Shown: positions 830-22,995 of the stretch, one piece after another
Layout of the letters: each line of letters begins with the position of its first letter
How positions within the stretch are numbered: position 1 is the first letter of the stretch
From: Diadema antillarum
Taxonomy: Eukaryota
DNA length: 64,000 bases
Reading direction: 5' to 3'
Assembly: GCF_040938485.1 (NCBI RefSeq)
Contig: NW_027271495.1
Coordinates: forward strand, 4,030,001 to 4,094,000
Made by a program: the position numbers and the translations under genes
Notes under the pieces: generated by a model
Database searches by the model: none
What the model was told of the DNA's origin: nothing
Seen by the model: only the letters and a program-made list of their open reading frames with translations

Positions 830-2700
830 CTGGGAAATTAGTCAAGAGATCAAAATCATTGGGAAACAGTTAGGGCCTACACGACAAACTGAAGCAAACT
901 CACATGAAATGAAAATGGCACACGACTATAGTTAAAGTCTGACGTGAAGGCAGTTCCGAGAAAAAATAAAAAGGAAGATTTATTTCATACAGATAAGGGG
1001 TGTACTCACCTCAGCTGAAAGCGACACTAAACTTTGAGGCAAAAGTGGTGTCCCGTAATAAATTTCACTAGTTGCATTGTAGCTATCTCCTCATGGGCCC
1101 ACCAAACAATACGAATCCATTATTCTTCAGCTTTAGAAATATGTTGATGGAGTGATATCTGAAATTTACAGTGTCTGTGCCCCCATAAGATGTCCTTTCA
1201 CATAACAAAGCCGCCATGAAAACCATGTAGGGCCTATACTCTGCTAATGTACACATAGCATTCCCTGGAATCCCAATCAAGAAGATCCCACCAAAATTGA
1301 AGCGGAATAAATTTTGAAGAAATATCTAATTTTAGCAAGCAAGGGCAGAACATCCCTTGTGTTACTACTGAAACTTTTTGTTATTCCCCCATATTGGTAT
1401 GTTCATACAATACAACAACATAGTTTCCTACTGCATATGGAGGTGTTTAGTGGTACCAGCAGTAATTTGATCTTTTGGGCATTTCTTTGAAATTGGCCCC
1501 ATTTAAGAAGCCCATTCATTTTACAATGGATCTGAACATGGATATGTTTGAAGTTCATGCAGATTACACATGCAGATTACACAGGAAGCCTTACCTGAGG
1601 GCACCCATTAACGTTATCTGTATACCCCTGGTATACCCCCCCCCCCCCCCCTCCCCCCTTCGTGTCAAATTACCTCAAAGAATGATTCCTGCAAATTTTG
1701 GTAAAAAAAGATTTAATATGTTCTTACACAAAATGAAAAAGATGAAATGTTGATGTTGATCATAATGTGTCATACCATAAAGTCAGATCCCCTTCTTGTC
1801 AATCAGACCACAGTCGCTATAATTAGTGTCATTCTTCATCTTATAAGGAGCATCAACCCATTTTTAGGATTGGCAGTGGGAGGTAAAACTTGCAGGATAT
1901 GCCCATGGGAAAGTGAAATGACGTAGAAGGTGGAAGGTTTAGGGGAATATCCCCTCCCACAGTAGACACTACTAGCATTTGAAAATGTGCAGAGCAAGTA
2001 TGGATTACCAAGCATGGTAAATACATATCTAAATACATGACTTAACAGTGGTATTTCAAGCAGATATAGTCTGATACATTCACCTCACACAAGGGAGCTT
2101 TTGCTTTTTTAAAGTTAAATTTTAATGACCTTGTGTACATTTTGGATGGAATATTTGGAAATTTGTCAATCCATAAAAAGTAAATAAGAATGAGAATATA
2201 TCCTGGGACTATGGGACTATGTGAAAGGCAAAATTGTGGTATCTGTCATCTCTACATGCTTGCATGTGTCTTCACACGCAGTTCAGATTTGCATGCAAGT
2301 ACTAGGTGTTTCAAAAAATATTTCCCACTTTTGATTCTTGATAATACAAAAATTGTATATCAGATAACACTGTCATTGATATGAGTGATAGCTGAATAGT
2401 GTACAATTTTGTTGAATATGGTTTAGATATGAAAGCATAAATCAGTTTCATGAAATCCATGATTAATTTCACAGTTAGGTTCCAGATTTTGCTCTATTTT
2501 CAACCCTCTTTACAAGACTTTCACTTTGCACAGGGGTCAATGGGTGTGTATAGGAGTGTGTCGTTAATACCCTGACAATGGTCCTGAACAATGCCCAGGG
2601 TTTGAATGCTTCATTATTTATTCACGAGAAATTCCACTATCACAACTAGTCTTTATTCAGCCTCTGGCAGTGTCTGTGTAAAGTTAAACACCTGCCGATA

Positions 2701-3650
2701 TAGTCTAGCGGGCGACGTATTTTTAGCCTAAATCAGTGATTGGCAGTCAATAGAGGGCGCGACGATGTGGCAGTCAAGTTGGCTAAAAATCCGTCTAGTA
2801 AGAAACCTCCGAATAGAGGCGTGGAACCGGGTGTGGCAAGACAGTTGTCAGTCGTCAGCTCTCGAAGTTTTATTGGCTGAGCATCGGATGTCAATCAAAA
2901 CACGTCGCAGAGCCCGAAGAAATGCTAGTCTACTCTCCTAGGTATACTACAGATAATCTTTCAATAAAAATACAGTTTGCCTGTCTCTTTCAGCTTACTA
3001 CAGTATTTTTCATTCTTCTCCATTCTTTTTAAGGTGTATTACATCTTACCTTACTTCAAATAGAAAAGAATAATGGTATTCAGTGCAACTGACTTCAGTT
3101 GTAAATCTATGAGGGTTTTGCACGTGGAAACTACGCCCAAACTACTGCCGAATGCAAACCTTCAATTATTGGAGTAAAGTCTACTTGATATTTACTTCAA
3201 TTGTATGTTTCGGAAATGCATTTGATATCACCACTCCCCTTTATCATTTTTAACCTTGAGTTGCCATATATTTTTGTATTAAACTTTGAATGATTTTTGC
3301 TTAACATGAATAAAGCTGCCGTCAATACATCAACCCCTATATCGGAGCACCGTAGACTTTAAACAGGCATTTTCTGTCGTGTTCACGCATGATCACACTG
3401 TCACGGAAGAACTCGTCCGCGGTAACATGGGCGTCCAAGGAGAAAACAAAGAGGAGCTGCGACACAAAAAGATTCCTGCAAAGCCAAAGGCACAGGTGGA
3501 ATATGGTGCATTCTTTGCAATCATGAAATTACGAGGTCCTGGCAACAAGTAATGATAAACCGATTGAATCTGATTCACATTTCATTACAAATGCATATGA
3601 GGACATCTTTGTGGCCATTCTGTATGCATACGTATGGCTAAATTGAGTAT
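2701..3650 (+). repeat. Left terminal inverted repeat (~950 bp)
   Basis: Reverse complement of ~19340-20305. About 5 mismatches in the outer ~215 bp by eye, several at CpG sites. Identity decays inward after ~3540. Confidence 0.93.
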
Positions 3651-4189
3651 CATCAACAAGCGAACAACTGTGGTAAAATACACATACAAACACGTGTGGC
3701 TCTGCTAAATAGTCTTGTACCATTTTCGCCTGGAACCTCTCGTTAAGAGGTGAGGCGTGGTTGTTAAAATAACATTCACTTGATTCGACCTGTCAGAAAT
3801 GAATTACACTCGTATTTTCTGACAAGATTTTAGAAATGATTATGTTCCTTCATGTCCTTTCTGGGATTCATCATTCCAAGGATCGTTAATCTGATAATAG
3901 AATCAGTTTCGTTATTCCGAAAACGAAATATTCTTCTTTTAGTTACAAAATACGTTGATGTGACAGCAATAATAAAAAGGCTGAATATTATGCTGTAAAA
4001 ATTGAATGAAAACACGCACACGTACTCATGCCTACACACGTGCACACACACGCATTGACACACACAAAGACAAGCATAATGACAAACATACACAAACTAA
4101 AAAGGTCAAAAATAAAGCACTCGTGTATGTGCTGATAATCCCCTTTGAAATACGGCCCAAATCATAGATCAGCCCCTTCCCACTCTCAT

Positions 4190-5435
4190 AACTTAAATGC
4201 ATCAGACATGCAGTTGTAAACCAAGGACGACAGAAAAAGGCAGCAACGGCGACGAAATTAAATCAGCCCACAATGTGCTTAGCTAATACCTCAACTTATT
4301 TTCCACTTTGCTTAGAGTAGCAAGCTTCTGAATGTGCTTTATCAAGACGTTTTGTCCAAGACACACGTGCTTTGGATTGCAGGGGTCAAATACCTCAGAC
4401 AGTTGTAGATAAGGGGTGACGAAAGAAGGCGGCAACGGTAACGAAATCGATTCAGCCACAATATTCTTAAATAATCCATCAACTCGTAATTCAACATTGC
4501 TGAGAGTTGCATGCTTCTCAACGAGCCAAATCAAGACATTTTATCCAAGAGACGTGCCCTTTGGATGAGAGGCTCAAATACTTGAAGACGTTGTAAATAC
4601 AGGATGACGAAATATGGCAGCAGGGTGACAAAATCGATTCAGCCAACAATATGCTTAGCGAAGATATCAAATCATTCTGCCACTTTGATTAGAATTGTAT
4701 GCTTCTCAATGTGCTGTATCAAAAATTTCTCTCCAAGTGGCATGAGCTTTGAATTAGAGGGCTGAAATGCATCAGACAAGTAGACAGAAAGGGTGACGAA
4801 AAAAGGCAGCAACGTGACAAAATCGAATCAACCTACAATGTGCTATGGTAATACAGTATAATACCAATTTGCTAAGGGTTACATGCCTCTCAATGTACTA
4901 TATCAAAAATTTTCTTTTTTTTCAGGATACATGTGATTTGGATTAGAGGGCTGATATACATGACGATGTTGTAAATAAAGGGCGAAGAAAAGAGAAAAGG
5001 AGAATGCTGACGAAATCGATTCAGGCAAACAATACGCTTGAATAATACATCAAATCGTTTTACGACTATGATCGGAGTTGCATGCTTCTCAGTGTGCTTT
5101 ACAGTGCATCATGAAGTTTTCCCCCAGTGACGTGTGCTTTGCATTCTAGGGCTCAAATACATGTACATGAAACTAATTGTACATGAAGGGTGGTGAAATA
5201 AGGCAGCAATGGTGTCTAAATCGATTCAGTCCACGATACGATTAGCTAATACGTCGAATTGTTCATTTTGTTCAGAGTTGCATGTATCCCAATGAGCTTT
5301 TGATATGGGGACTCAAATGCATCAGAAAGTTGTACATAAAGGACGAAGATAAAGGCAGCAACTGTGAGAAAATTTAACTAATCCTTAATGTGGTTAGGCA
5401 GTATATCAACTCGTCATACCACTTTGCTGAGAGTT
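4190..5435 (+). repeat. ~189-bp tandem (satellite-like) array, left part, about 6-7 diverged monomers
   Basis: The motif AAGGGTGACGAAAAAAGGCAGCAACGGTGACGAAATCGATTCAGCC recurs with anchors near 4252, 4441, 4628, 4817, 5010, 5215 and 5367. Confidence 0.92.
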
Positions 5436-5601
5436 TTTTTTTTTCTTTTACAAATTTACTTATTTCCTCTTCATTATACAACATAACATACAAAATCATA
5501 TTACAAATCATGTTTTGTTTAACAAATTAACATCAACAACAACAACAACAGTAAAAGATGGGTATCAAACTCTTCAACAATTGAACAATATCCTAAAGAT
5601 A

Positions 5602-5795
5602 CAGTCAGCTCTCGTTACAATAAACTCCTTGGGCCCAGCGAAATCACCGTGATCTTGTCACTTTTGAAACCTTGCCGTATCCAGGGCGCAAATACCTCTG
5701 AATAGGAAAATTTTCAAACCCTGGGACCCCCAAAAAACTACCCCATCACGTCGGGGTTCTGCCATATGGATATTCTTTATCACGAGAGTCGACTG
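5602..5795. mobile_element. 194-bp pogo/Tigger-type MITE inside the LINE 3' UTR
   Basis: TA|CAGTCAGCTCTCGTTACAA ... TTATCACGAGAGTCGACTG|TA: imperfect TIRs with TA on both sides. Confidence 0.75.
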
Positions 5796-5814
5796 TATGT
5801 TCTTCTACAATGAC

Positions 5815-8800
5815 CTAAAAAATATTTTCTACAGGGGACCATTTCTTATAATGAAAATTTAATTTGTTTGTTCGTTTTGCAATGTTGGATTCTATATATC
5901 GGATATTAACAATAAATGCTGTCAATCCATGAAATTTCACACCTGTATCTTTGCATCTCTGAATATATATGTACCTTTTGTATAACAATATTAAATGATT
6001 CAATAAACTCCTGTGGGGCCCTTTCCAGTCTTTGATGAATCCAAACATTACTCTAATTCTTGTACAATCCTCTAATTTGACATGAAAGATCGTACCAATT
6101 TCATCCACAAATTTTTGAAGTAATTCTTTGGCAGCTTTACAATAAAAAAACAGATGTACAGGGGTCTCAGCACATGACTTACAAAGCGTACACAACTCTG
6201 ATTCTGATATTTTCATCTTAAACAATCTTTCATTTGTGTAAAGTATATTATGCGACAACTTGAACTGAAATTCTCTCAATTTTACTTCAATTGTACATGT
6301 AAATGGCAACATATATATTTGTGTCCAATCTTCTGGTTGAATTCCATACTTGCCAGCAAAAACTGTTTCGCAAACAGGTCTTGATTTAATCTCTTTTAAA
6401 AATTCCTCATATATTGGTTTTGATTTCACATTTTGTAACTGTGAAATAATAAGATCCTTTTGTTTTTGAGCCACTTCTTCTTTCCAAAACATCTCCAATA
6501 GGAGTGTATTGAAGGAACATTTCGAGTATTTTTGAACAGAGTCTACAATTGCCATATACATCATATTATATTTGCTTGGCACTCCTTTCCTTAACCAAAA
6601 TTCAAAATCAATGAGCCGTCCATCAATACTAAATATTTGATATATATAACATAAACCTGCTTCAAAAAACGGGCTGCAGAATATTGAGTGCTTATCAATC
6701 AAAATATTCTGGTTATTCCATACTGGTTGTTGTAGGATGTCTGCTTGGCTATTTTCATCACCAATACAATCCTCATGTATGTTTGTCTTTAACCATATTT
6801 GTAGAATATTCTCATAGAATGGAGGGATACCCCTCTTATCAATAGTTTCAAGGGAATAATTACTTTGAAACACTAGAATTCCACCAAGCCTTTTTAAGAA
6901 ATAATCTCCCAATAGCACCCATTGATGGTTACGATTTCCATAATATCTTTTAACCCACTTAACTAACTGCGTATCAATCATACATTGTAAATTGGGGAAT
7001 TTGAGACCACCCTCAGCATATTGTGCATACATAGTTGACCTTGAAATCTTATCTGGGCCATTCCATAAAAATGAAAACATTAACTTCTCTACTTCTTTCA
7101 CAAAATCTTGAGGAATTTCAATGTTTGACATCAAATAAATTATCTTAGACATAATAAATGTTTTCAAAATTTGAATTTTACCAATTAACGTTAAATTACG
7201 ATTCTTCCAAATAAAAAATGTTCTCTTAATCTCACCCAATCGATCTTCAAAGTTTCTTCGGATTGCTTCTTTTTTGTCATATGAAAACCAGATTCCAAGA
7301 ATTCTAAGACCATTGTCTGTCCACTTTATCATCTGTGGCTTTTCTTTCGATAGTCTATCATTTCCTATCCACATTCCTTCTGATTTGCTTCGGTTGAGGC
7401 AAAGGCCTGATATCTCAGAAAATTCTTGAAAGCTTTCTAGTAATACTGATAATGATTCTGTATCCTTACAAAAACATGTTATATCATCAGCGTAAGCTGT
7501 ATATTTAATCTGTTTTCCGAGCATCTCCATTCCAATAATATTTGGATTATTTAACAATCTCATTAGATATATCTCGAGCCCTAATATGAATAAAAGGGGG
7601 GCAAGGGGGTCGCCTTGGCGAACACCCCTTCCAATTTCAAAATAACCAGTGGTAAAGCCATTTATCAATACACAGCTATTTATACCTGCATGCAATGTTC
7701 TCACCCATTGTATCATTGACGGACCAAAATTAAGACATTCTAAACACTGTAATAAATACCTATGACTGAGTGAATCAAATGCTTTGGTAAGATCTAATGC
7801 TAACACAATTCCAGATACATTGTTGGCATCTGCATAAAACATTAAATCTGAAATCAGTCTTATACCTTCACCTATATATCTGCCTTTAATAAATGCTGTT
7901 TGCTGAGGATTTATCAAATTACCAATAATTTTGGACATACGTTTCGCTAAACATTTAGAAAGTATCTTTGCATCCACATTTATTAAAGTGATTGGTCGCC
8001 AATTGCCCAATAATCTCTTATCTTTATTGGATTTAGGAATCAATTTAATTATTCCTTGCCTCTGTGACACGGACATACTTCCTTTTTCAAAAGCATGATT
8101 AAATGATCCTATTAGTTCTTTAGAAATCAAAGGCCAAAATGTCTCATAAAATTCCACCGATAAGCCATCATTACCAGGTGTTTTATTTTTTGACATCCCA
8201 AGGAGGACTTCCCTTGCCTCTTCATGTGTTATCAGGCCTTCACAAGAGGCCTTTTCATCTTCCGTGAGGTGTTTTAAGCAGGAACTTTTTATGTAATCAT
8301 AACTCACTTTGTCAGACACTGTATCCCTGTTTTCAAACTGTTTACCAAAAGATTTCATCACAAAATTTCGTATATGATGGGGATGTTCAATAAGTTCCTC
8401 ACCTGTATCTAATACATCTATGTTTGTACTCTGTGCTTGTGTCTTTTCCAATGATAAAAAATATTTTGTACTCTTCTCTCCTTTCTCGTACCAGGTACAT
8501 CTTGAACGTAATATGGCCCCCTCTGCTAAATAATTGTACATGCAGTTAAGTTCCTGTTCAATTTTCTCTTTCTTATCCCATTTTTGCTCATTCATTTCTG
8601 TCGGGTCCATGTCATTTATTATTTTCAATTCTTGTTCTAATTCTTTTCTTCTAATTTCTTTTATATTTTTCTTCCTTTTAGAAAATGTGATTGTAAATTC
8701 TCGTATTTTGAATTTTAACCAATCCCATAATTTTCCTTTATCATTTTTATCTTCCCATTCATTTACCCACATCTCATAATGTCCCTTTAAATTTTCAACA

Positions 8801-9597
8801 TACTCAACATCACTAAGTAAACTGTTATTAAACTTCCAATAAGATGGGCCCACAGTGTACTCTTTAATTCTCAGATGTAAATTCACAAAATCATGATCTG
8901 ACAAAACACAGGGGACCATATCACAATCTGTCACCATATTTTGTACAGACTCATGGATTAACCAGAAATCCAGTCTTGACTGAACACAAGGATTGGAGCG
9001 TCTCCAAGTAAATCGTCTTAATAACGGGTTCTTGTCTCTCCAGATATCTATTACATGATAAACATTTTTAATATTTTCTATTATTTCACAAGAGTGCTTC
9101 CAAGTGGACTTCATATTACCGCCCTCTCGGTCCAATGCCAAATTTTGAATAAAATTAAAATCTCCCCCTATTAATATTGTCTGTTCAGCATCATAATATT
9201 CTTGTATAGTCAAGTCTACAGCTTTAAAAAAATGCATGTGATCTTTTTCATTATTTGGTGCATATACATTACATATCATAAATTTTTTTCCATATACTTC
9301 CATTTTAACCAACAAAAATCTCCCGTTAGAATCTTTCACTGTCTCTATCAATTTTATATGTGGGGTTTTCCGAAATATGATACACACTCCCCTACTAGAG
9401 GAGGTTCCATGACTGAATACAATATCGGCTCTTAATTGGTTCTTCCATAAACTTTCATCCTTATCAGTCGAATGGGTTTCCTGTAATAAAATAATATCCT
9501 TTTTTAATTTGGATAAAAAACAAAAATATTTTTTCCTGGCTTTAAAGTCCCCTAGCCCATTAACATTATGGGTCATTAACTTCAGATCCTTATACAT
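5815..9597 (-). CDS. LINE ORF2: APE endonuclease, reverse transcriptase and C-terminal Cys-rich zinc-binding domain (1260 aa)
   Basis: Motifs THNVNGL, LLQETH, GGDFN, SRLDFW, SDH, GVRQGDPLAP, YADD and CTLCKSCAETPVHLFFYC. The ORF is uninterrupted. Confidence 0.96.
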   Translation of the reverse strand: MYKDLKLMTHNVNGLGDFKARKKYFCFLSKLKKDIILLQETHSTDKDESLWKNQLRADIVFSHGTSSSRGVCIIFRKTPHIKLIETVKDSNGRFLLVKMEVYGKKFMICNVYAPNNEKDHMHFFKAVDLTIQEYYDAEQTILIGGDFNFIQNLALDREGGNMKSTWKHSCEIIENIKNVYHVIDIWRDKNPLLRRFTWRRSNPCVQSRLDFWLIHESVQNMVTDCDMVPCVLSDHDFVNLHLRIKEYTVGPSYWKFNNSLLSDVEYVENLKGHYEMWVNEWEDKNDKGKLWDWLKFKIREFTITFSKRKKNIKEIRRKELEQELKIINDMDPTEMNEQKWDKKEKIEQELNCMYNYLAEGAILRSRCTWYEKGEKSTKYFLSLEKTQAQSTNIDVLDTGEELIEHPHHIRNFVMKSFGKQFENRDTVSDKVSYDYIKSSCLKHLTEDEKASCEGLITHEEAREVLLGMSKNKTPGNDGLSVEFYETFWPLISKELIGSFNHAFEKGSMSVSQRQGIIKLIPKSNKDKRLLGNWRPITLINVDAKILSKCLAKRMSKIIGNLINPQQTAFIKGRYIGEGIRLISDLMFYADANNVSGIVLALDLTKAFDSLSHRYLLQCLECLNFGPSMIQWVRTLHAGINSCVLINGFTTGYFEIGRGVRQGDPLAPLLFILGLEIYLMRLLNNPNIIGMEMLGKQIKYTAYADDITCFCKDTESLSVLLESFQEFSEISGLCLNRSKSEGMWIGNDRLSKEKPQMIKWTDNGLRILGIWFSYDKKEAIRRNFEDRLGEIKRTFFIWKNRNLTLIGKIQILKTFIMSKIIYLMSNIEIPQDFVKEVEKLMFSFLWNGPDKISRSTMYAQYAEGGLKFPNLQCMIDTQLVKWVKRYYGNRNHQWVLLGDYFLKRLGGILVFQSNYSLETIDKRGIPPFYENILQIWLKTNIHEDCIGDENSQADILQQPVWNNQNILIDKHSIFCSPFFEAGLCYIYQIFSIDGRLIDFEFWLRKGVPSKYNMMYMAIVDSVQKYSKCSFNTLLLEMFWKEEVAQKQKDLIISQLQNVKSKPIYEEFLKEIKSRPVCETVFAGKYGIQPEDWTQIYMLPFTCTIEVKLREFQFKLSHNILYTNERLFKMKISESELCTLCKSCAETPVHLFFYCKAAKELLQKFVDEIGTIFHVKLEDCTRIRVMFGFIKDWKGPHRSLLNHLILLYKRYIYIQRCKDTGVKFHGLTAFIVNIRYIESNIAKRTNKLNFHYKKWSPVENIF

Positions 9598-9976
9598 ATT
9601 TCACAAGTAGGTAACCTTGTAAATTCTTATGACCCACCATGATCAAGACAAAACAGACAACAAAACATTGGCAATGAAAAAAACACACATACAATTTGCA
9701 TGAAATCGAATAAAACATGATCACAAGGAATCCAAGTGCCCCTGGGCATCTTCACAGTTATTTTTTCCTCAGGTTGGCAAAAACAAATGATTTTCCTTAT
9801 CACTTAATCACATGAAAAGTGTATCTTGTCTTCGGAGATATCAACTGTTAATATACTGCTGGCATGACAGGGTGCCGACTGCTGAGCTATCGCAGTCGTG
9901 TCAAGAGTTTTTCAAAGTATTTCGTATTTTGTTAGACCATTGTCTACTGTGCAAAAGCAAACTGCCAATATCCATT

Positions 9977-10969
9977 CTATCTTGTGGTGTGCTGCTTGTA
10001 CTCCACTTCTTTTCCGCTCTCAGTCTCCCTGTAAAACAATCGCGCCGGATATTTGAAGTACACCTTTCGCTTTGGGTCCTCCTCTTTCAGCTTTCGTTTC
10101 AGTGGCAGCAATTTCCTCCTGCTTTCTCGCACTTCTACCGGCAGCATCTCATCGACAAATATCTGGTGATCCTTTCCGTTGTGCTGAAAAGGCCTCTCCT
10201 TCAAATATCTGCGGGCACTGCTGATCACTGTTTGTCTGGTTGTGTATCTACTGAAAGCTACCACAACTGGGCGAGGAGGGCCGGGTTTTGGCCTGATGCG
10301 GCCTGTGCGATGAGCTCTTTCAATGCTCACTTCACCTTCCATTTGCATATTTGACTTGGCAAATTCTTTGATCAATTGCTCACACTTCCCAGCGTTTTCA
10401 GCACCTTCAGGAAACCCGTAAAACACAGCCGTATTCCTCATCTCTCTCGCAGTGAGGTCAACAAGACGCTCTCTCAATTTCATATTCTCCTTTTCTTGCT
10501 TGTTTACTTGGTCCTGTAACTGTTTGATATCAAAACGGCACGACTCTTGCTCCTCTTTCAAGTTACTGATTTCTTTCTCATTTGTTTCAATCTTACCAAG
10601 AGCTGTGTCCAACCTGGATGTGAGATTGGAGTTCATTTCGTCTATCTTGTGGATAAGGGCCGCGAGTAGTTCATCTGTGGTTGACTTCTCCCCGTCTACT
10701 CGTCGTTTTTTCTCAAGCGAGGAGCGTGGAGGTGATTCCGCCGACGCGCCCGGGCTGGTTCCCTCCATATCTCGGTGAAGTGGTTTCACTACCGTGTGCA
10801 CTGCCGAGTCAGTTAAGCCGTGTGCATTATCACTGTCACTGTGTTCTTGCGTAGCCTTCTCCGTAGTAGCGTCGCTAAAATCCATCTTAGGGTCAAAATC
10901 CTCCTTTTCCTTGAAATAATGGGAGATTGTAACGACTCCTTGTTCTAAGCTCCTTTTTCTCGATGTCAT
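9977..10969 (-). CDS. LINE ORF1: L1-type coiled coil, RRM and CTD RNA-binding protein (330 aa)
   Basis: A heptad-rich region followed by REMRNTAVFYGFPEG, IERAHR, PRPVVVAF and YPARL, typical of L1 ORF1p. Confidence 0.9.
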   Translation of the reverse strand: MTSRKRSLEQGVVTISHYFKEKEDFDPKMDFSDATTEKATQEHSDSDNAHGLTDSAVHTVVKPLHRDMEGTSPGASAESPPRSSLEKKRRVDGEKSTTDELLAALIHKIDEMNSNLTSRLDTALGKIETNEKEISNLKEEQESCRFDIKQLQDQVNKQEKENMKLRERLVDLTAREMRNTAVFYGFPEGAENAGKCEQLIKEFAKSNMQMEGEVSIERAHRTGRIRPKPGPPRPVVVAFSRYTTRQTVISSARRYLKERPFQHNGKDHQIFVDEMLPVEVRESRRKLLPLKRKLKEEDPKRKVYFKYPARLFYRETESGKEVEYKQHTTR

Positions 10970-12834
10970 TTTGACTTTTCAAACTGTAATAGGCGAAATG
11001 AGCTGCAATTTTATTTCCTCCTAATGCCTCCGTAACACTCAGGCACGTCCTAACCGCACAGCGCCATCTTGGATTCGTGACTTTGCTGAGAGTTGCATGG
11101 TTCTCATTGTGCTACAGCAAGACGTTTTCTCCAAGAGGTATGTGCTTTAGATTAGAGGGCTCAATTGTATCAGGAAGATGAAAATAAAGAGTGACGAAAA
11201 CAGACAGCAACGGTGACGAAATCGATTTGGACCAAAATTTACTCAAGTACTACTCCTCTTTATACCTTTCTACAGAGAGCCGAATGGTTCGTATCATGCT
11301 TTATCAAGGCGTTTTTATCCAAGAAGAATGTACTTTGGATTACAGGGCTGCATGCTTCTCAATGTGCTATATCAAGAAATTTATAAAAGAGACGTGTTTA
11401 TATTAGAGGGGTCGAAAATACATGATGAGGTTGTAAATAAAGGGTGACGAAGAAGGCTATCAGGGTAACGGAAGCAAACAATGTGTCTAAATGATGCTTC
11501 AAATTGTTATACCAAACTACTTAGTGTTCCATGCTTCTCAATGTGCTACATCAAGACATTTTCTCCCAGAGACATGCTCTTTGCATTCGAGGTCTTAAAT
11601 ACATGATGCCGTTGTACACGAAGGGTTACGAAAAAGGCGACAACAGCGACGAAATCGATTTAGTCCAGGATATGATTAGCTAATTCATCATATTGTTATA
11701 CCATTTTTTTACAGTTGTATATCACAATGTACTTTATCAATATTCTTTTCAAGTGGCATGAGCTTTGGATTAGACAACTGAAATGCATCAGAAAGCTGTA
11801 CGTAAAGGTTGACGAAAAATTCTCCCAGAGACATGCTCTTTGCATTCGAGGTCTTAAATACACGATGCCGTTGTACGCGAGGGGTTGCGAAAAAGGCGAC
11901 AACAGCGACGAAATCGATTTAGTCCAGGATATGATTAGCTAATTCATCAAATTGTTATACCATTTTTTTACAGTTTTATATCACAATGTACTTTATCAAT
12001 ATTCTTTTCAAGTGGCATGAGCTTTGGATTAGACAACTGAAATGCGTCAGAAAGCTGTACATAAAGGTTGACGAAAAATTCACCAGCTATGACGAAATCA
12101 AATAAGATCAAAATGTGGTTACGTGATATATCAACTCGTCACGCCACTTTCTTGGGAGTTGCATGGTTCTCAGTTTGCTAAATCAATACGTTTATCCAAG
12201 AAACGTGTGCTTTGGATTAGAGGGCTTAAATGTATCAGACAGTTGTAAATAAATAGTGACAAAAACAGGCAGCAACAGTGACGAAATCGAATCAGCCCAC
12301 ATTTTGCTCAAGCAATAAATCCACTCGTCATATCACTTCATTGAGATATGCATGCTTCTCAATGTGCTTTGTCGAGATGTTATATCCAAGAGATGTGTCC
12401 TTTGGATCAGAGGGCTCAAATGCATCAGTCATTTGTAGATAAAGGGTGACGGAAACAGGCAACAGCGGTGACGGAATCGAATCAACCCACATTTTGCTCA
12501 AGTAATGAATCAACTCGTCATATCACTTTACTGAGAGCTGTGTGCTTCTTATTGTGCTTTATGAAGACATTTTATGCAAGACATGTAAGCTTGGATTAGA
12601 GGGCTCAAACGCATCAGATAGTTGTAAATAACGGGTGACGAAAACAGGCAGCAGCGGTGACGGAATCGAATCAGCCAACAATGTTCTTTATTACTTGTAC
12701 ATCAACTCGTTATACCGCTTTACTGAGACTTGTATACTTCTCAACGTGCGATATCAAGACGTTATATCAAAGAGAAAAGTGTTTTGGAAATATGGCTCAA
12801 GTACATCAAAGAGTTGACAGACAGGGGAAAACCC

Positions 12835-13340: not shown

Positions 13341-14039
13341 CGTACTACATCCAGAACCAGACAGGATGGCGAAAAAAGGCAGTAACGGTGATGAAATTTA
13401 ATCCAGCCCCGATGTGTAGGTAATGCATCAACTCGTAATACCACTTTGCTTAGAGTTGCAGGCTTCCAAATGCTCTACATCAATATGTTTTCTCCAAGAG
13501 ACAAGTGTTCTAGATTATAGGCTCAAATACATGATGACGAAGTGAATAAAGGGTGACGAAAAAGGGCAACAGCAGTGACGAAATGGATTAAACAATAAGC
13601 TAAAATATTACATCAAATCGTTACACCAAGTTGTTTAGACAGACATGATTCTCAATGAACTATTTCAAAACGTTTTTGTCGCAGAGATATATGCTTTGCA
13701 TTCGAGTTCTTCAAGGACAAGTTCACCTTGCTAGACATGTAGATTGAGTAAATGCATTTCTATTTATGTATAATATTATTCAAGCATATTGTTGCCTCAG
13801 TCGATTTTGTCACCTCTGCTGCTTATTTTCGTCACCCTTTACTTACACCTCATCATGTCTCTTGGAGAAGACGTCTTGATATAGCGTATTGGAAACCAGG
13901 CACCTCTCAGCAAAATGATACAACGATTTGATGCATTACCCAACCTCATTAATTCATTGATAAACACTGCAATTTTGTCACTGTTGCCTCTCATTTTCGT
14001 CACCCTATAGGTCTATGTACAACTGTTTCATGTATTTAA

Positions 14040-14592
14040 AGGACAAGTTCACCTTCATAGACATGAGGGTTAAGTGAATGCAACAATATTAGTAGAACAC
14101 ATCAGTGAAAATTTGAGGAAAACTTGACAATCCGTCTAAAAGTTATGAATTTGTAAAGTATCTGCACAATCACTGCTACATGAGAAGACTATGATGTCAT
14201 ATGCATAGAACCATAATTATGACGAAAATAATAACAGAATTTCATAAAACTTCGCTTCTTGAATAAAGTGCATATTTTCTGGACTTGTTACTGACGTATG
14301 TTATATGAGTAACACTATCCCCCTCGCCTCTGAAATAGAGAAGTCAATTGTTCTTTTGTTATGCGAGAAAAGTGGAAATATGTTTGATTTTCTTTATACT
14401 TTTTTATATTGCTGTACACATGTGACATCACAAGCCATAGTAGTCTTGTCATCCAGCCATGACTGAGCAGAAACTTCAAAAATTCATAACTTTTGAACGG
14501 ATTGTCCGGTTTTCCCCAAATTATCACTAATGTGCTCTGCTAATATTGCTGCATTCACTTAACCCATATGTCTGTGAAGGTGAACTTGTCCT
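14040..14592. mobile_element. MITE with AGGACAAGTTCACCTT terminal inverted repeats and TTAA-like flanks (Kolobok-type)
   Basis: TTAA|AGGACAAGTTCACCTTCATAGACATG ... ATGTCTGTGAAGGTGAACTTGTCCT|TTGA. A third, solo end occurs at ~13713-13760. Confidence 0.75.
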
Positions 14593-16019
14593 TTGAATAC
14601 ATGAGACAGTTGTACATATAGGGTGACGAAAATGAGAGGCAACAGTGACAAAATCGATTCAGCCAACAATATGCTTAAATGATCCACTAAATCGTTATGT
14701 ATAAAAGTTTTTTCCAAATTACAAATGCTTTGGATTTGAAGGACACGCATGAGATAGTTGTAAATAAAAGGTGGCCAAAAAGGCGGCTCGGTGACGGAAT
14801 TGAATAAGCCGACATTATGCAAAAACTAAGCATCAAATCACTATGTAACTTTTTGGAGAGCTACATGCTTCTCAATGTGCTACAAGAAGTTTTCTCCCAG
14901 AGATATATATTATGCTTTGCATTCGAGAGATCCAAAACATGAGAAACTTGTATATAAAGGGTGACGAAAGAGGCGACTACGGTGAAGAAATCGATTCTGC
15001 AAACGATATGCTTACGTACATCGAATTATTATATCACAGTATTTAGAGGTGCATGGATCTCAATGAGCGTATCAAGAAATATTCTCAAAGTGACATGTGC
15101 TTTAGATAAGAGGACTCAAGGGCATAGGACAGTTGTACATAAAAGGTTACGAAAAACGCAGCAACGGTGACGAAATTGCAGTGTTTATCAATGAATCAAT
15201 GAGGTTGGGTAATACATCATACCGTTGTACTGTATCACTTTGCTGAGAGGTGTCTGGTTTCCAATACGCTATATCAAGACTTTTTCTCCAAGAGACATGT
15301 GCTGTGGATTAGAGGCTGTACTACATGATAAGGTGCAAGTAAAGGGTGACAAAAATAAGCAGCAGAGGTGACGAAATCGATTGAAGCAACAATAATAATA
15401 TGCTTAAATAATAAATCAAATCGTTATACCACTTTGCTTAAAGTAGCATGCTCCTTAGTGTGCTTTAGCAGAAAGTTTTCTCCCAGAGACATGTACTTTA
15501 CATTTGAGTTCTCAAATTCATCAGTCAGCTGTAAATAAAATACATGGTGACGAAAAAAAAAGCATCAACGTTGACAAAATCTATTCGGCCCACAATCTGC
15601 TGAAGTTACACGTCAACTCTTCGTACCACTTTGCTGAGGGCTGCATACTTCTTACAGTGCTTAATCAAGACGTTTACTCAAAGAGATAGGTGCTTTTAGA
15701 AAATTGGATTAGACGGTTCAAATACATGATGAGGTTGTCAATAAAGAGTGAAGAGAAAAGACAGCCACGATGACGAAATCGATTCAGTCAACAATATGCC
15801 TAAATAACAAATTAAATCGTTAAATACCACTTTTCCAAGAGTTACATCCGTCTCAATTTGTTATATCAAGAAGGTTTCTCCGAGAGACATGTGCTTGCAT
15901 TTGAGGGCTGAAATACACCATACAGAGGTAAATAAAACAACCTCAAACCCTTTTGGAGATATATTTTATTGAAACGTCAGGACAGAACCAGCATCCCCAT
16001 TCAAACAAATAGGAAGACC

Positions 16020-16630
16020 GAATTCATGACAGCAAAACTAAGGCTCAGACGTTACTTAAAGAGTTCAAGTCCTTCTTCACGAGAGTGTCTTATCTGATAC
16101 CAGACACAGTTACTCCACCCTCCATGAACAGCACACCGCTACACAGTCAACGGTGTGGAAACCCTGTTCGGGAGAATAGAGGTTTCGAAGCCACAGGTCT
16201 CGACCCATTACCTAACACAGTGCAAAAAGAGTGTGCAAAGGAGCTGGCTCCAGTGCTGGGGAATATCTTTCTCTTCAGTTGTCAGTAGATACAGGCAACT
16301 TGTCATCTAACTGGAGGTCTGCTCATGTCACACCAGTGTCGAGGAAAGGAGATACACATCAACCAGGAAATTACAGAACTGTTTCCCTGACATCCGTGAT
16401 GTGTTCAAAACATGAGCAGATGATATGTAAGCATTCTTGCAACATTTGGAGAATCACAACATCCCGTCGCCCTTTAATTATGGTTTTAGAATAGTGATTG
16501 AACAATTGCCCAGCTCCTCACAACAATGTATGATCTTTTTCTTGCCCATGGCAAGAAGATCCAGACTGACACCACCTTTTCGGGTCTCCAAAGCTTTCGA
16601 TACATTACCGAACAGTTCTCAGGCGGTTAC
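16020..16630 (+). pseudogene. Decayed CR1-group reverse transcriptase fragment
   Basis: Frameshifted pieces DSKTKAQTLLKEFKSFFTRE, GLDPLPNTVQKECAKELAP, NWRSAHVTPVSRKGD..QPGNYRTVSLTS and YGFR. Confidence 0.8.
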
Positions 16631-16795
16631 TATTTTTGTGCTGAATAAACGACCTACCAAATACCCTCAAGTCCCGACTCATTACGCCTTTTGGTAGATG
16701 ACTACCAATTTAAAAAATAAGTCAAATCTCAGCGCGATTATCTCAATTAAAATATTTATTTCAACTAAAAAAAAAAATGGGCATCCGACTGGGGA

Positions 16796-18620
16796 ATGAG
16801 GCTCAATGGTGACAAATGCCAAGTTGTGAGCACTGACGACAAATCCTCATACTTGCCCCAGGCCACCATAGACAAAATTATCACTGAATGCAATGTACAT
16901 ATGACCAAGAATGAATTTCTCAGGAGGTATCACTTTTCATGTGCTGATATAGCGAAGTATACATGGACACCTCATTACACTTGTCTGGGAAGAAGTGAAA
17001 CTGAGCTTTTATCAACAGAGTACATTGAACTTGATGATCTCACGTCTGAAGATGGCTCAGATGTTTGGCCTATGAACGAGTATGCTGATGCACAAAAGGG
17101 AATAGTGACAGTGATGATGATTAGATACGGGAGTAGATCAAGTTCAAGAAACTTTACTGAATTAAAGGCATTATTTACCATGTGCAGATGAAACAAAAAC
17201 CCAGCTTAAGTGCTTCAAAATAGTTCTAAAATTTGGATTAAGGATAGAAACGACAAATGTAAAAATTAAGTTCTATACTACTATGTATTGTTGAATATAC
17301 AAATTGGGTACAATAGTTATGATAAAAAATTTAGCTAAGTTATAGTTTATTGAGAAAGGCTTTATTGGTTGGGGCTTTTTTATACAATGCATCAAAATTG
17401 ACATGATAATTCGAACATCTTTAAATCACTACTCCCAATGGTAAACAATGTCTTTAATAATCTGCATCGCCTCGTTAAATGTTTTTTTACTGCTACTAAT
17501 AAGTATTTCGTCTTGTGCACAACATCCATCTCTTTGTCTTGGATACACAGCATTTCGATAACATTTTCTATAGTTTTTAGGACTCCTTCCAAATCATCTG
17601 CTCTTATCGTCAGGGTTTGCTCGCATCTTAATAAAAACCACGTTTAATTGGTCTTCTTGTTTTTGAAGGGAATATAAGCAACATTATTATGAATTATGAT
17701 CAGTGCATTTCAATACACAAGGCCAGCGCACTTGAGCAAACTGCAACCCACTGGTAGAATTAAAACTAACTAATCACATTGTTATGTGTACTATGACTGA
17801 ACTGCAAACCGAATTTGGTTCACGTGAGTGAACATGTTTTACACAATATAGGCCTATTTGAAAATGTAGGCCTATTGGCATAAATTTCCAGTTTAGAAAA
17901 TATGAGCAAAAATAGCAAGATTGAACAACCTTCTTGCTTTTCTCAAAGCCAACATAACTTTAATCCCCTTTGCTTTCTAATATAAATGCTATCTCGACTA
18001 CATCATGGCCATTTGAGATGAAATATTGGTTGTATGGATGATTAGACTGTAGTCCTATTATTATTATACTGACCCATTTGTCTTGCACGTTATGGTAGTA
18101 CAATACAGAAAGCGTTTCAGCGCCTCTGTCACAAATTTCCATCATTTATCCATAAATTACAAATATATTCATCTCCCAAATTCATATGTTATAATGATTA
18201 TCATAGATTTAAGTCATTTTCACCATGATCATAGAAATCGTTGATGCTATTTCTCCATAGTCATTAAACGACTCTTGGCGTTTTATGACAGCATGTTTTA
18301 CAGTAGTCGTTGAGATAAGTTGTCGGCCTATTTGCACACATATAGAATGCAAGGTTTCACTTCATATCTATTACTCGATAAGTCATTACTCTATTGAGGC
18401 ACTTCCATCATGACTGGTGATGTATGTGTCGCTGGACAGAATCTATAGCTTTAAAGAGGATCGCATTTCCATGTTTCGCTATTCGAACAGAGTCACTTTC
18501 TTTGTCAGCTGAATTGGACATTGTGAAAAGTGTCTTTTTTTCAGGCAAACGTATATCAAAGCAATGAAAATTCTGGTTTTCTTGCGCTGACCACTAACGC
18601 AAGTTATTTATACAGATATT
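16796..18620. pseudogene. Degenerate coding-like remnants inside the long-TIR element, unidentified (possibly its own former genes)
   Basis: A plus-strand 131-aa ORF with an acidic tail (16796-17191), and minus-strand protein-like stretches with stops and frameshifts at ~17400-17640 and ~18250-18560. No catalytic motif was recognised. Confidence 0.3.
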
Positions 18621-19339: not shown

Positions 19340-20305
19340 GTTAGCTTAATTTGCTGCATTGGCATGCATTCGAAGTGGTCAAAAAGATGTCATCATTTGC
19401 ATTTGTAAAGAAATGTGAATCAGATTGAATCGGTTTCTCCTTACTTGTTGCCAGGACCACATAGATGGCATCTCGTAATTTCATGATTGCAAAGAATGCA
19501 CCATATTCCACCTGTGCCTTTGGCTTTGCAGGAATCTTTTTGTGTCGCAGCTCCTCTTTGTTTTCTCCTTGGACGCCCATGTACCGCGGACGAGTTCTTC
19601 CGTGACAGTGTGATCACGCGTGAACACGACAGAAAATGCCTGTTTAAAGTCTACGTTGCTCCGATATAGATATAGATGTCTTGACGGCACCTTTATTCAT
19701 GTTAAGCAAATATTATACAAAGTTTAATACAAAAATATATGGTAACTCAAGGTAAAAAATGATAAAGGGGAGTGGTGATATCAAATACACTTCCGAAACA
19801 TACAATTGAAGTAAATATCAAGTAGACTTTACTCCAATAATTGAAGGTTTGCATTCGGCAGTAATTTGGGCGTAGTTTCCACGTGCAAAACCCTCATAGA
19901 TTTACAACTGAAGTCAGTTGCACTGAATACTATTAGTCTTTTCTATTTGAAGCAAGGTAAGATGTAATACACCTTAAAAAGAATGGAGAAGAGTGAAAAA
20001 AACTGTAGTAAGCTGAAAGAGACAGGCAAACTGTATTTTTATTGAAAGATTATCTGTAGTATACCTAGGAGAGTAGACTAGCATTTCTTCGGGCTCTGCG
20101 ATGTGTTTTGATTGACATCTGTTGCTCAGCCAATAAAACTTCGAGAGTTGACGACTGACAACTGTCTTGCCACACCCGGTTCCACGCCTCTATTCGGAGG
20201 TTTCTTACTAGACGGATTTTTAGCCAACTTGACTGCCACGTCGTCGCGCCCTCTATTGACTGCCAATCACTGATTTAGGCTAAAAATACGTCGCCCGCTA
20301 GACTA
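19340..20305 (-). repeat. Right terminal inverted repeat (~960 bp)
   Basis: Reverse complement of 2701-~3650. Confidence 0.93.
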
Positions 20306-22995
20306 CTGCCGATACTGTCGTTGAGTCGCGTCAGTGCTCTCCCTACTTCTGAAAAACAAAATTACAATGAATACCTTCAGTTCTGTCGTAAGCATGGTGA
20401 CAGGAAGCAAAGAAAATCAATTAGAGTACACATTTTTGTATACGGAACCTTAAATAAATCTACTGTGAAACGAATTGCCCCAATGAAAAATGCTGCTGAA
20501 CTCTTTACCAAAAATGATCTCTTTTTATCGAAAAAGCGACCAATTTGTCAGACTACTAGTAGACAGTTGTATAAAAATGAAGAACTTTAGATTATTTATG
20601 TTTATTCATATCCCAAATTTAGTGATATGTGAAGCAAAATTTGAAAATGATTGCCAGCTGGAATGAAATGTGGTGTTTGCAAGCACATGGAAACATGTGC
20701 GTACTTTTTCCATGTGCATTCATTTTACCCTTTACCGTGCATGAATTCAGACTAGCAGTGCCCAGGGCAATCCATATGAATTATTGATTACGCATCCATG
20801 TGCCTGGGAGCGCGAGACTGACGCCTAATCAACAGGTGGTTCAGGCATGTCCATTGTTCAGGGCCATTGTCAGCACACACTCACATACACATCATTGGTT
20901 CCTGTGCAAAGTTCAATCTTTATACAGAGGGTTAAAATTTGACCAAATCTGAAACCTTATTTCAAAATCAATCTTAGATCTAATGAAACTGATTTATGCT
21001 TTCACATTTAAATTGCCTTCAACAAAATTGTACGCTATTCAACTATTACTCATATCAATGACAGTTTTATCGGATGAATAGTTTTTGAACTATTACAGAT
21101 CAAAAATGGGAAATGTTTTCTGAAACACCTAGTATATGTATAACTCTTCCCGCATGAGTGAGTTTTTGCATTACTAGAATTGAAATTCAACAATCTGGTG
21201 CAGGCTATTTATATAGCTACCTATCCTGGAATATTTTGAAAGTGATATATGAATAAGTAAGAATAATGAACATCTCAGGACAATGTGAAATGCTAAATCA
21301 CGGTATCAGTCAACGCATGGGCGGCGAAACCGGAGGGGGGGGGGGGGGGTTCTTGGCCCATGCTGTTATTTTTTTTTTTCATCATTCAAAGAAAAACTTG
21401 GAAGTGCGTAAGTGGTACTAGAAAGAAATAGAGAGAAACTTTGAAGTGTGAGCGTGGCAAGGCTTTGTTTTTGCATTGAATTTTTGCTTGTCAGTTGAAG
21501 AAACCCGGAAATGGAAGAGAAAGATGAGGTGAAGATTTTTTTTTTTTTTTTTTGCTCGTCAGCTGAGGAAACCCGGAAGTTGCACCAGAAGTTGCGCTGA
21601 AGGCCCAGTGCTACATAAGTCCATGGAAGTTGACCAAGAAGTGGGAGAGTGTGGGAGAGGGTTATCCCCTCCATAAGTCTTCCATGCCAGGATGCATTTT
21701 GCTTTTGTTACAATTGAAATTCACTGATCTGGTGAACACTTTGGGTCGAATATTTGGAAAACTTTGCAGTTGAAAAGGTAAGAAAAACTATTCAGGGACA
21801 ATATGAAGGGCTATCAAATCACCACATTTGTTACCTACATAATTTTCTACGTGCGAGTCGTTAGAGTTGGTATCTTATGGGCCTGGAGAATATATAGGTG
21901 GCAACCTGGTGGTGACTCCATTCTCCATTGGTTACATAGACGTCTCTGCAACATCTTCAGGAGACTAGCTGTATCTCCGGAGAGACACTGGGAATTTAAC
22001 CTATTTGAGTTTGGGGAAGACTTTTTCCTGTCTCCAGCGAGTCTTGCAGGAGATGTCCGCATGACGTCTCAATCTGCTGTGTCCACGTCAAGGAGACTGA
22101 TCTTGTTCATGAATGGGGAGAAATCTCAACGACGTCACCATAACCTTGCAGAGACTCCCGACGACCACCTACCAGTGATGGTGGAGATATCGCAGAGATG
22201 TCTCGCAGATTGCCGAGCTCGCCAGAGATGGAATTAGTGACGTCCCCTTGGCTTCTGAGCAAATAACTTATCACCTTGTTTGTAGAAAGCTCTCCCTGGA
22301 GTCACCTAATGTTGAGAGGGCCGCAAAATTATATATTTGCCCCCCTCCAACATTTTCATGGGGAGGGGGCAGTTGTTGCCCCCAGCACCATGCAGTTTAG
22401 GCCTGTTGTTCCTTTTCCTACCTACACCAGACGACTGGAATAGCTTTGCTTTATACTCCCTTTGCTGATAATGTTATCATGCCTTTTGACAAAAAGTCAA
22501 ATGTAACCACAACATTCTTTCCGAACGTGTCTCTCCTAAATTTCCAATAAAGCTACCTCTGTCACATGCCATGGACAACTTAGATTCTTTGTTCAAAATA
22601 ATATATGATAAATGCAAAACAACTCGGTTGTACTCAGTCTGGATATGGAAGTGATGAATTTTGGAATTCACCTATACTTAGGGGGCAATATCCTCTATGC
22701 CATCAATATTACTGAAAACTATACAGGCCAAATGTGCTTCAAATTGGATCACAGATGTTGAAGGGAAAAAAATCAATAAATGATATGAAGGGCCTAATGC
22801 TGGATCGATGAATAATTAATGTACATAAGCTCAGTTCACCCCATGGCACAGGTGACAAATGATGACCATACATCCTACTTATATGACATGAAATATACGC
22901 TTCCTGCTTGCAGGAGATACAACTATCCTCCAGCTATTTTCGGTATGTTGCTAGACTTTGCTTTAGAATACACAAGTAGAGTATAAACCACATAC

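What the first reader, a model, noticed from the sequence alone, without database searches (positions are those of the whole stretch)
2692..20314. 17.6-kb cargo-carrying DNA transposon with ~950-bp TIRs, TAG...CTA ends and a 9-bp TSD (AcademH-like)
Seen: an exact 9-bp TSD (CTGCCGATA) abuts near-perfect kilobase-scale inverted repeats 17.6 kb apart. The interior has no intact transposase; it holds a satellite array, old CR1 debris, a MITE and a LINE. Known: TAG...CTA termini characterise Academ, and the helicase-encoding AcademH lineage makes 9-10-bp TSDs, while MULE/Foldback also give 9-bp TSDs but usually have other termini. Inference: the young TIRs and intact TSD around an old, decayed interior suggest a non-autonomous derivative that moved several kb of repeats as one unit in trans.
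Basis: partly seen in the sequence, partly recalled or inferred. Interest (0 to 1): 0.78.

Follow-up and report, generated by a model that had tools for sequence, protein, structure and literature searches.

The report
Gene-less long-ended jumping DNA, recently inserted
This is a real, recently inserted copy of a 12-kb enzyme-less DNA transposon family of a sea urchin; an unrelated LINE later made this copy longer, the other chromosome copy still has the empty site, and the proposed AcademH assignment is plausible but unproven.

Summary
Window 2701-20305 is bounded by about 940-bp inverted ends (TAGTC...GACTA) and an exact 9-bp duplication, CTGCCGATA.

It is one copy of a family: 180 such ends occur in the genome, against 0 for the control pattern. 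Eleven of twelve complete relatives checked have 9-bp duplications.

A second contig, C414, carries the same locus uninterrupted, with one CTGCCGATA. The insertion is therefore polymorphic.

The "17.6-kb cargo" reading needs correcting. The unit that spread is about 11.9 kb and non-coding, and its whole interior is shared at 94-98.5% between copies. The extra 5.65 kb is an intact L1/Tx1-type LINE with its own 13-bp duplication, and its junction is unique in the genome.

No transposase was found in this family or in two related ones.

AcademH is neither shown nor refuted.
- For: the 9-bp duplication, and a strong target motif (G-C-A, one base, the 9 bp, one base, T-G-C). A young helicase-carrying, 9-bp-duplicating 20-kb transposon that I located in this genome shows a similar pattern, on only eight flanks.
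- Against: that element's ends are unrelated, and no helicase or Academ-like exon lies inside any copy I could place.
- No active Mutator-type enzyme turned up either.

An unchecked first-reader note (s1-225718) may describe another member. This is an ordinary new family of a known kind.

The parts
2692..2700 (.). Left copy of the 9-bp target site duplication, CTGCCGATA
   Evidence: The empty allele on C414 has this 9-mer once.
2701..3636 (+). Left terminal inverted repeat, starting TAGTCTAGCGGGCGACG. The outer ~200 bp is the part best conserved across three subfamilies and holds repeated motifs: GGCAGTCAA twice, AATAGAGG twice, and an inverted ATTTTTAGCC.
4195..5098 (+). Internal tandem array, 189-bp unit, 4.7 copies. 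It is part of the family's shared interior, and unit number varies between copies.
5421..5433 (.). Left copy of the LINE's own 13-bp target duplication, ACTTTGCTGAGAG
5434..11079 (-). Nested intact L1/Tx1-type LINE, 5,646 bp, with its poly(A) at the low-coordinate end. ORF2 is 5815-9597 (1260 aa: endonuclease, reverse transcriptase, zf-RVT). ORF1 is 9977-10969 (330 aa, coiled coil). Absent from the 7 other full copies compared.
   Evidence: The junction is unique in the genome.
11080..11092 (.). Right copy of the LINE's 13-bp target duplication
11561..12775 (+). Second block of related tandem repeats (259-bp and 190-bp periods). Shared interior.
13419..15394 (.). Shared by the other full copies.
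   Evidence: I3, I6-I10.
16013..17188 (+). Run of short open frames in shifting phases on one strand. Possibly old LINE reverse-transcriptase debris. Weak evidence.
   Evidence: No Pfam hit.
19357..20305 (-). Right terminal inverted repeat
20306..20314 (.). Right copy of the 9-bp target site duplication
2297..2700. Left half of the ~1.23-kb high-copy repeat into which the transposon inserted. Its right half is 20306-21141. Its own 213-bp inverted ends are pair I2.
   Evidence: Many paralogous copies run uninterrupted through the insertion point.

Best explanation
**What it is.** Window 2701-20305 is one copy of a non-autonomous, long-ended (foldback-like) cut-and-paste DNA transposon family of this sea-urchin genome.

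**The unit (shown).** It is about 11.9 kb: two ~940-bp inverted ends around ~10 kb of non-coding sequence. That interior holds tandem arrays, an inverted-repeat module and old decayed debris, and it is copied faithfully with the ends.

**How it moves (inferred).** A transposase made elsewhere binds the outer ~150-200 bp of the ends. This is the only part conserved across the three subfamilies. The enzyme cuts the element out and joins it to a target cut with a 9-bp stagger. It prefers G-C-A, one base, the nine bases, one base, T-G-C.

**This copy (shown).** It landed in a 1.23-kb high-copy repeat. The homologous contig still has the empty site.

**The LINE.** An intact L1/Tx1-type LINE sits in one of the internal repeat units, with its own 13-bp duplication. 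It accounts for the extra 5.65 kb. Whether it entered before or after the move to this locus cannot be told.

**Other sizes (inferred origins).** Shorter relatives (8.7 kb, 7.4 kb, 168 bp, 101 bp) look like internal-deletion products. Longer ones are nests of other repeats.

**The enzyme.** It is unidentified. My odds are about 45% an AcademH-type transposase, 30% a Mutator/Foldback-type one, 25% something else.
For: - **Ends and duplication:**
- **Family size:** 180 termini against 0 for the control.
- **9-bp duplications in relatives:** 8 of 8 paired copies (one pair matches 8 of 9 letters), plus the window copy itself. Also the 101-bp mini (exact) and the 5.4-kb family-B copy (8 of 9), and the 19-kb C1630 copy.
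- **Shared interior:** 94-98.5% identity between 8 copies. The 11,851-bp consensus has no open frame above 158 aa.
- **No protein domains:** no Pfam domain in the 20 largest interior frames.
- **Empty allele:** C414 matches both flanks at 99%, overlapping by exactly 9 bp. Read directly, it equals the predicted join.
- **LINE:** absent from the 7 other full copies, own 13-bp duplication, junction unique genome-wide.
- **Conserved outer ends:** 80-84% invariant columns in the first 150 bp across subfamilies A, B and C, falling further in.
- **Target motif:** from 31 distinct flanks, C at -12 in 25 (p about 7e-13) and G at -13 in 19.
- **Long copies are nests:** the C1630 interior matches other dispersed repeats.
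Against: - No autonomous partner was found, so the trans-mobilisation step is inferred from the family's structure, not shown.
- Only about 45 of roughly 90 end pairs could be placed. Listings stop at 100 rows.
One of them could carry a gene.
- Academ-type transposases have no Pfam model (PMC5751038). The Pfam blanks therefore do not exclude decayed Academ exons in the interior.
- The nearest sister copies are only 98.2-98.5% identical. 'Recent' means within the span of present polymorphism, not necessarily within a few generations.
Confidence: 0.85

Rival explanations
1. One reading: a non-autonomous derivative of the AcademH lineage, mobilised by an Academ transposase working with its helicase.
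For: - AcademH makes 9- or 10-bp duplications (PMC10045372, citing Kojima 2020). Here they are 9 bp throughout.
- The genome holds a very young 20,067-bp element with a RecQ-like helicase exon: 6 copies at 97-100% identity over the stretches compared, and at least 35 copies of a 2.48-kb deletion derivative. Three of three derivatives have 9-bp duplications. So a machinery that makes 9-bp duplications is active now.
- Its 8 flanks show G in 5 of 8 at -13, a pyrimidine in 8 of 8 at -12, and A in 5 of 8 at -11. This is the same pattern as the clan's. Maize Mu shows a different, weaker pattern, SW::SW...WS::WS (PMC2774946).
- No active Mutator-type enzyme was found.
Against: - The ends of that helicase element (TAACCCCGTCG...) match the clan's (TAGTCTAGCGG...) at 5 of 11 positions. 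That fails the 11-letter, one-mismatch rule Repbase uses to group non-autonomous elements (PMC4455052). Local similarity of the first 200 bp is no better than shuffles.
- No Helicase_C or RecQ-family hit, and no homologue of its transposase-side exon, lies inside any clan pair I could place.
- The target-motif comparison rests on only 8 flanks.
- I did not verify that the 20-kb element's transposase is Academ-type.
Confidence: 0.45
2. A Mutator/Foldback-type non-autonomous family, like Tm1 of root-knot nematodes or Tetris of Drosophila virilis, moved by a MULE-type transposase.
For: - 9-bp duplications plus long composite inverted ends are the classical Foldback/Mutator signature (PMC3169594; PMC4079207).
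- Family B is almost a complete fold-back, with arms to about 2.5 kb.
- Internal tandem repeats are typical of such elements.
Against: - PF10551 gives 22 hits, mostly single loci or haplotig pairs. None is on a contig that carries a clan terminus.
- PF00872 gives none, and SWIM only 5.
- The target motif lies 2-4 bp outside the duplication and is strong, unlike maize Mu's weak SW::SW (PMC2774946).
- Divergent MuDR lineages such as Rehavkus might escape these Pfam models.
Confidence: 0.3
3. The whole 17.6 kb, LINE included, transposed to this site as one unit. On this reading the LINE is true cargo.
For: Cut-and-paste movement removes the donor. A LINE-bearing copy could therefore move and still be the only copy with that junction. 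The element tolerates large size: clan copies of 19-25 kb have intact ends.
Against: Nothing requires it. The LINE family is active on its own: intact ORFs, and many other copies elsewhere. The 7 other full copies compared lack the LINE.
Confidence: 0.25
4. Not a transposon: a chance or assembly-made inverted duplication.
For: None found.
Against: 180 identical termini at different loci, each with its own 9-bp duplication, and a precise empty allele.
Confidence: 0.01

Closest known systems
AcademH lineage of Academ DNA transposons (Kojima 2020, as summarised in PMC10045372)
   Same: 9-bp target duplications. Ends begin with TA. The preference for G-(C/T)-A two to four bases outside the duplication resembles that of the helicase-carrying 20-kb element in this genome.
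   Different: No helicase, no transposase, and no remnant of either. The ends are unrelated to the in-genome helicase element beyond TA. That element has only a short, imperfect inverted match at its tips, against ~940-bp arms here.
Foldback / Mutator-type non-autonomous elements: Tm1 of Meloidogyne (PMC3169594), Tetris of Drosophila virilis (PMC4079207), and the sea-urchin TU elements (Liebermann 1983, cited in PMC4079207; details from memory)
   Same: Long inverted ends, internal tandem repeats, gene-less copies of very different sizes, and 8-10-bp (mostly 9-bp) duplications. Like Tetris, the superfamily can only be guessed from the duplication length.
   Different: The ends here are unique sequence with a few repeated short motifs, not arrays of short tandem repeats. 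No MULE partner was found. The target motif differs from maize Mu's.
Tx1D/Tx1L of Xenopus laevis (from memory): a DNA transposon with internal tandem repeats that hosts a site-specific LINE
   Same: A LINE of the L1/Tx1 type sits inside a repeat unit of a DNA transposon's internal array.
   Different: Here the junction is unique. Most other copies of this LINE's 3' end lie on contigs where no clan terminus was listed. Site specificity is not shown. From memory, Tx1D makes 4-bp duplications.

Membership tests
AcademH | Target site duplication of 9 or 10 bp (PMC10045372) | tested here: met
   9 bp in the window copy and in 11 of 12 complete relatives checked. Two of those pairs match 8 of 9 letters. 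The 168-bp mini on C68 has an irregular left flank.
AcademH | Encodes, or is visibly derived from an element that encodes, an Academ DDE transposase and a superfamily-2 helicase | tested here: not met
   No open frame above 165 aa in 7 full copies or in the consensus, and no Pfam domain. No Helicase_C, RecQ-family or transposase-exon hit lies inside placed clan pairs. Academ transposase has no Pfam model, so decayed remnants cannot be excluded.
AcademH | Terminal letters 1-11 match an autonomous member with at most 1 mismatch and the same TSD length (the rule Repbase states for grouping non-autonomous elements, PMC4455052, applied here to an autonomous member) | tested here: not met
   Against the one young helicase-carrying, 9-bp-TSD family located (C193:4266144-4286210), 5 of 11 match. 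There is no local similarity beyond shuffles. Ends of the other Academ-like loci could not be read.
   Kojima 2020 is not held, and the papers read do not give Academ termini. The in-genome helicase element ends TAA...TTA.
MuDR / Foldback | Target site duplication of 9 bp (8-11) | tested here: met
   For Tm1 and Tetris see PMC3169594 and PMC4079207.
MuDR / Foldback | A MULE-type transposase in an autonomous relative with the same ends | tested here: not met
   PF10551 gives 22 hits, none on a contig with a clan terminus, and most are single loci or haplotig pairs. PF00872 gives 0 and SWIM gives 5. Divergent MuDR lineages may escape these models.
hAT | 8-bp target site duplication | tested here: not met
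   All duplications are 9 bp. In the window copy the tenth base differs.

The most novel reading that the evidence does not exclude
The TAGTC-ended clan is the non-autonomous partner of an Academ-type enzyme whose own element has unrelated ends. That enzyme could be an undescribed AcademH lineage, or the young 20-kb helicase element acting across families. The shared G-Y-A / T-R-C target signature would then be the footprint of one integration machinery. The genome would offer a natural helper (20 kb) and reporters down to 101 bp for a first functional study of Academ transposition.
Probability: 0.2. Interest if true: 0.55.

Novelty: new member of a known kind. Interest (0 to 1): 0.3.

Why it matters
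The finding mainly helps annotation. It defines a roughly 90-copy, 12-kb gene-less transposon family with exact ends, a proven empty site and a clear target motif, in a genome where such large repeats can be mistaken for segmental duplications or for 'cargo capture'.

It also shows that the apparent cargo is the family's own interior plus later nested insertions.

The one wider point is the target-site motif shared, on few data, with a helicase-carrying 9-bp-duplicating transposon. If that holds, target-site logos could assign orphan 9-bp-TSD elements to Academ or to Mutator when no enzyme is left.

Tried and rejected
**False leads while looking for an AcademH element**
- I first misread the 6-copy helicase element as a TTAA-targeting piggyBac/Kolobok type, because a TTAA precedes its end in one copy. 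Derivative copies showed 9-bp duplications and a TAACC end.
- The piggyBac transposase next to it (L047:110-1426) lies outside it.
- The three-copy Helicase_C hit on C135/C1203 looks by eye (from memory) like a host DDX23-type DEAD-box gene.
- The strongest RecQ hits, on C15/C147, are a host gene and its paralogue. The flanks are 100% identical over 8 kb, which marks haplotigs, not transposon copies.
- The transposase-side exon L048:7212-7664 overlaps a high-copy repeat and gave no usable result.

**Literature**
- Kojima 2020 (PMC7165386) is not held.
- No paper read gives Academ termini.

**Reads**
- Logan contigs break at the high-copy host repeat, so no contig bridges the junction in any of 4 runs. 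Neither presence nor absence in other individuals can be told.

**Pack-MULE-like capture of host DNA**
- Rejected. The one long clan copy read (C1630, 19 kb) consists of a family-B-like frame plus other dispersed repeats.

**Limits reached**
- Earlier-findings look-ups by sequence were blank.
Full report
**1. The observation**

Both strands read directly show the same outermost letters, TAGTCTAGCGGGCGACG, at 2701 and, reverse-complemented, at 20305. The repeat finder gives three arm segments:
- 2701-3424 / 19582-20305, 96% over 724 nt
- then 111 nt at 100%
- then 107 nt at 84%

The ends are therefore about 940 bp long. CTGCCGATA abuts both ends, and the next base outward differs on the two sides, so the duplication is exactly 9 bp. 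The element is 17,605 bp.

**2. It is a family, and the unit is 12 kb**

The outer 300 bp has 40 scored matches at 98-100% (235 first-look candidates), many in facing pairs 7-17 kb apart. The 19-nt terminus occurs 84 times forward and 96 times reverse with at most one mismatch. The reversed control occurs 0 times.

Some loci are present twice with identical flanks, so the assembly holds haplotig duplicates.

I fetched seven further complete copies. Their whole length aligns to the window copy at 94-98.5%. The differences are:
- unit number in the tandem arrays
- one shared 4.8-kb deletion, giving the 8.7-kb and 7.4-kb copies
- a 5,659-bp block present only in the window copy

The majority consensus is 11,851 bp, and its longest open frame is 158 aa. 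The 20 largest open frames of the window's shared interior have no Pfam domain at E below 0.01.

So the satellite arrays (4195-5098 and 11561-12775), the inverted-repeat module (13419-15394) and the possible reverse-transcriptase debris (16013-17188; weak) are the family's own interior. They were already decayed when the family spread.

**3. The extra 5.65 kb is a later or hitch-hiking LINE**

The private block is a minus-strand LINE at 5434-11079. It has an 11-nt poly(A) and a perfect 13-bp duplication, ACTTTGCTGAGAG (5421-5433 and 11080-11092).
- ORF2 (5815-9597, 1260 aa) has endonuclease, reverse-transcriptase and zf-RVT domains.
- ORF1 (9977-10969, 330 aa) gives only sub-threshold matches to coiled-coil families.

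A 260-bp probe across the junction matches in full only here. Other loci match either the transposon half or the LINE half. Because cut-and-paste removes the donor, I cannot say whether the LINE entered before or after the move to this locus.

**4. Proof of mobility**

Both flanks match contig C414 on its minus strand at 99%:
- left flank (window 1201-2700): C414:149997-151487
- right flank (window 20306-21805): C414:148511-150005

The two matches overlap by exactly nine bases. Read directly, C414 has flank, one CTGCCGATA, flank. This is identical to the predicted join, and there is no footprint.

The target lies inside a 1.23-kb high-copy repeat (window 2297-2700 plus 20306-21141). Many of its paralogues also run uninterrupted through the point.

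Public read sets did not help. Their short contigs break at that repeat. They do show that a second species label holds contigs that start exactly at 2701 with other flanks.

**5. Duplications and target choice**

| Element | 9-bp duplication |
|---|---|
| 8 paired copies | 8 of 8 (one pair 8 of 9 letters) |
| 101-bp mini, C426 | GCTGTTTCG |
| 5.4-kb family-B copy, C241 | 8 of 9 letters |
| 19-kb copy, C1630 | AGTTTGACC |
| 168-bp mini, C68 | irregular left flank |

From 31 distinct end flanks, read toward the element, there is a strong symmetric preference outside the duplication:
- G at -13 in 19
- C at -12 in 25 (binomial p about 7e-13)
- A at -11 in 16

The target is therefore G-C-A, one base, nine bases, one base, T-G-C.

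**6. A clan of related gene-less families**

The 5.4-kb element on C241 shares the first 19 letters and about 80% of the ends, but has an unrelated interior. It folds back on itself to about 2.5 kb per arm.

The 19-kb element on C1630 has ends 90% like that family. Its interior is made of other dispersed repeats.

Across the six arms of the three subfamilies, the first 150 columns are 80-84% invariant, and conservation falls inward. The outer 200 bp holds repeated short motifs. I take this region to be what the enzyme recognises; that is an inference.

**7. Which enzyme?**

*Mutator type.* I found no sign of a recently active MULE.
- PF10551 gives 22 hits, none on a contig with a clan terminus. 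Most are single loci or haplotig pairs.
- PF00872 gives none, and SWIM gives five.

*AcademH type.* Earlier notes of this scan, unchecked by me, report young 20-kb AcademH elements in this genome, which they name Diadema antillarum. I located a matching element at C193:4266144-4286210, 20,067 bp.
- It has a RecQ-like helicase exon.
- It has 6 copies at 97-100% identity over the stretches compared.
- It has at least 35 copies of a 2.48-kb internal-deletion derivative.
- Three of three derivatives read have 9-bp duplications. The ends are TAACCCCGTCGCGGGG ... CTGCGGTTA.

A helicase plus 9-bp duplications are the AcademH hallmarks as summarised in PMC10045372. I did not test its transposase.

Evidence against a link to the clan:
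- Its ends match the clan's at 5 of the first 11 letters and show no similarity beyond shuffles. This fails the rule Repbase uses to group non-autonomous elements (PMC4455052).
- No helicase, RecQ-family or transposase-exon hit falls inside any clan pair I could place (against 19, 35, 42).

Evidence for a link:
- Its eight flanks show G 5 of 8, pyrimidine 8 of 8 and A 5 of 8 at -13, -12 and -11. This is the clan's pattern.
- Maize Mu has a different, weak SW::SW...WS::WS pattern (PMC2774946).

I put AcademH-type at about 45%, Mutator/Foldback-type at about 30% and other at about 25%.

**8. Verdict**

This is a real and tidy case: a polymorphic insertion of a large gene-less long-ended transposon, with a nested intact LINE. 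It is an ordinary new family of a known kind. The headline '17.6-kb cargo carrier' and the AcademH label are respectively overstated and unproven.

One of them could still hold the missing gene.

Noticed in passing
window 2297-2700 and 20306-21141: A ~1.23-kb repeat with its own 213-bp inverted ends (78% alike) is the host of the insertion. The first look found 3,000-5,000 candidate matches at 92-96%, so it is one of the genome's high-copy elements. Its type was not determined.
   Followed up: partly
window 5421-11092: The nested LINE has both ORFs open and sits in a motif (CCACTTTGCT.AGAG) that recurs in each unit of the transposon's 189-bp array. Most other copies of its 3' end lie on contigs where no clan terminus was listed, which argues against strict site specificity.
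   Followed up: partly
window 31006-36038: Gypsy-type LTR retrotransposon coding region: zinc knuckle, protease, reverse transcriptase, RNase H and integrase. The frame is interrupted between 34614 and 34797, within the integrase zinc-binding part. Described only.
   Followed up: no
window 36864-39707: A second LINE open frame (947 aa, endonuclease plus reverse transcriptase), different from the nested one.
   Followed up: no
G000:C193:4266144-4286210 (L047:5233 to L054:4780): A 20,067-bp helicase-carrying element with TAACC...GGTTA ends. This copy's two flanks (GGCTACTCT and GGTCTAGAG) do not form a duplication, unlike its 2.48-kb derivatives. It may have been rearranged.
   Followed up: partly
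G000:C999:553013-556208 and C1210:79136-80893: Four, respectively two, MULE-domain matches about 0.8-1.5 kb apart on one strand, each in a short open frame. This looks like a tandem array built from a piece of a Mutator transposase.
   Followed up: no
L044 (G000:C68:212289-212456): A 168-bp mini-element made of two 84-bp ends. ATTTTGTAATA occurs on both sides, but on the left it is separated from the element by 7 extra bases (CTACGAG). This could be an aberrant insertion or a repair scar.
   Followed up: no
L047:110-1679 (G000:C193:4261021-4262590): A piggyBac-type transposase open frame (DDE_Tnp_1_7, 256 bits) about 3.5 kb outside the helicase element.
   Followed up: no
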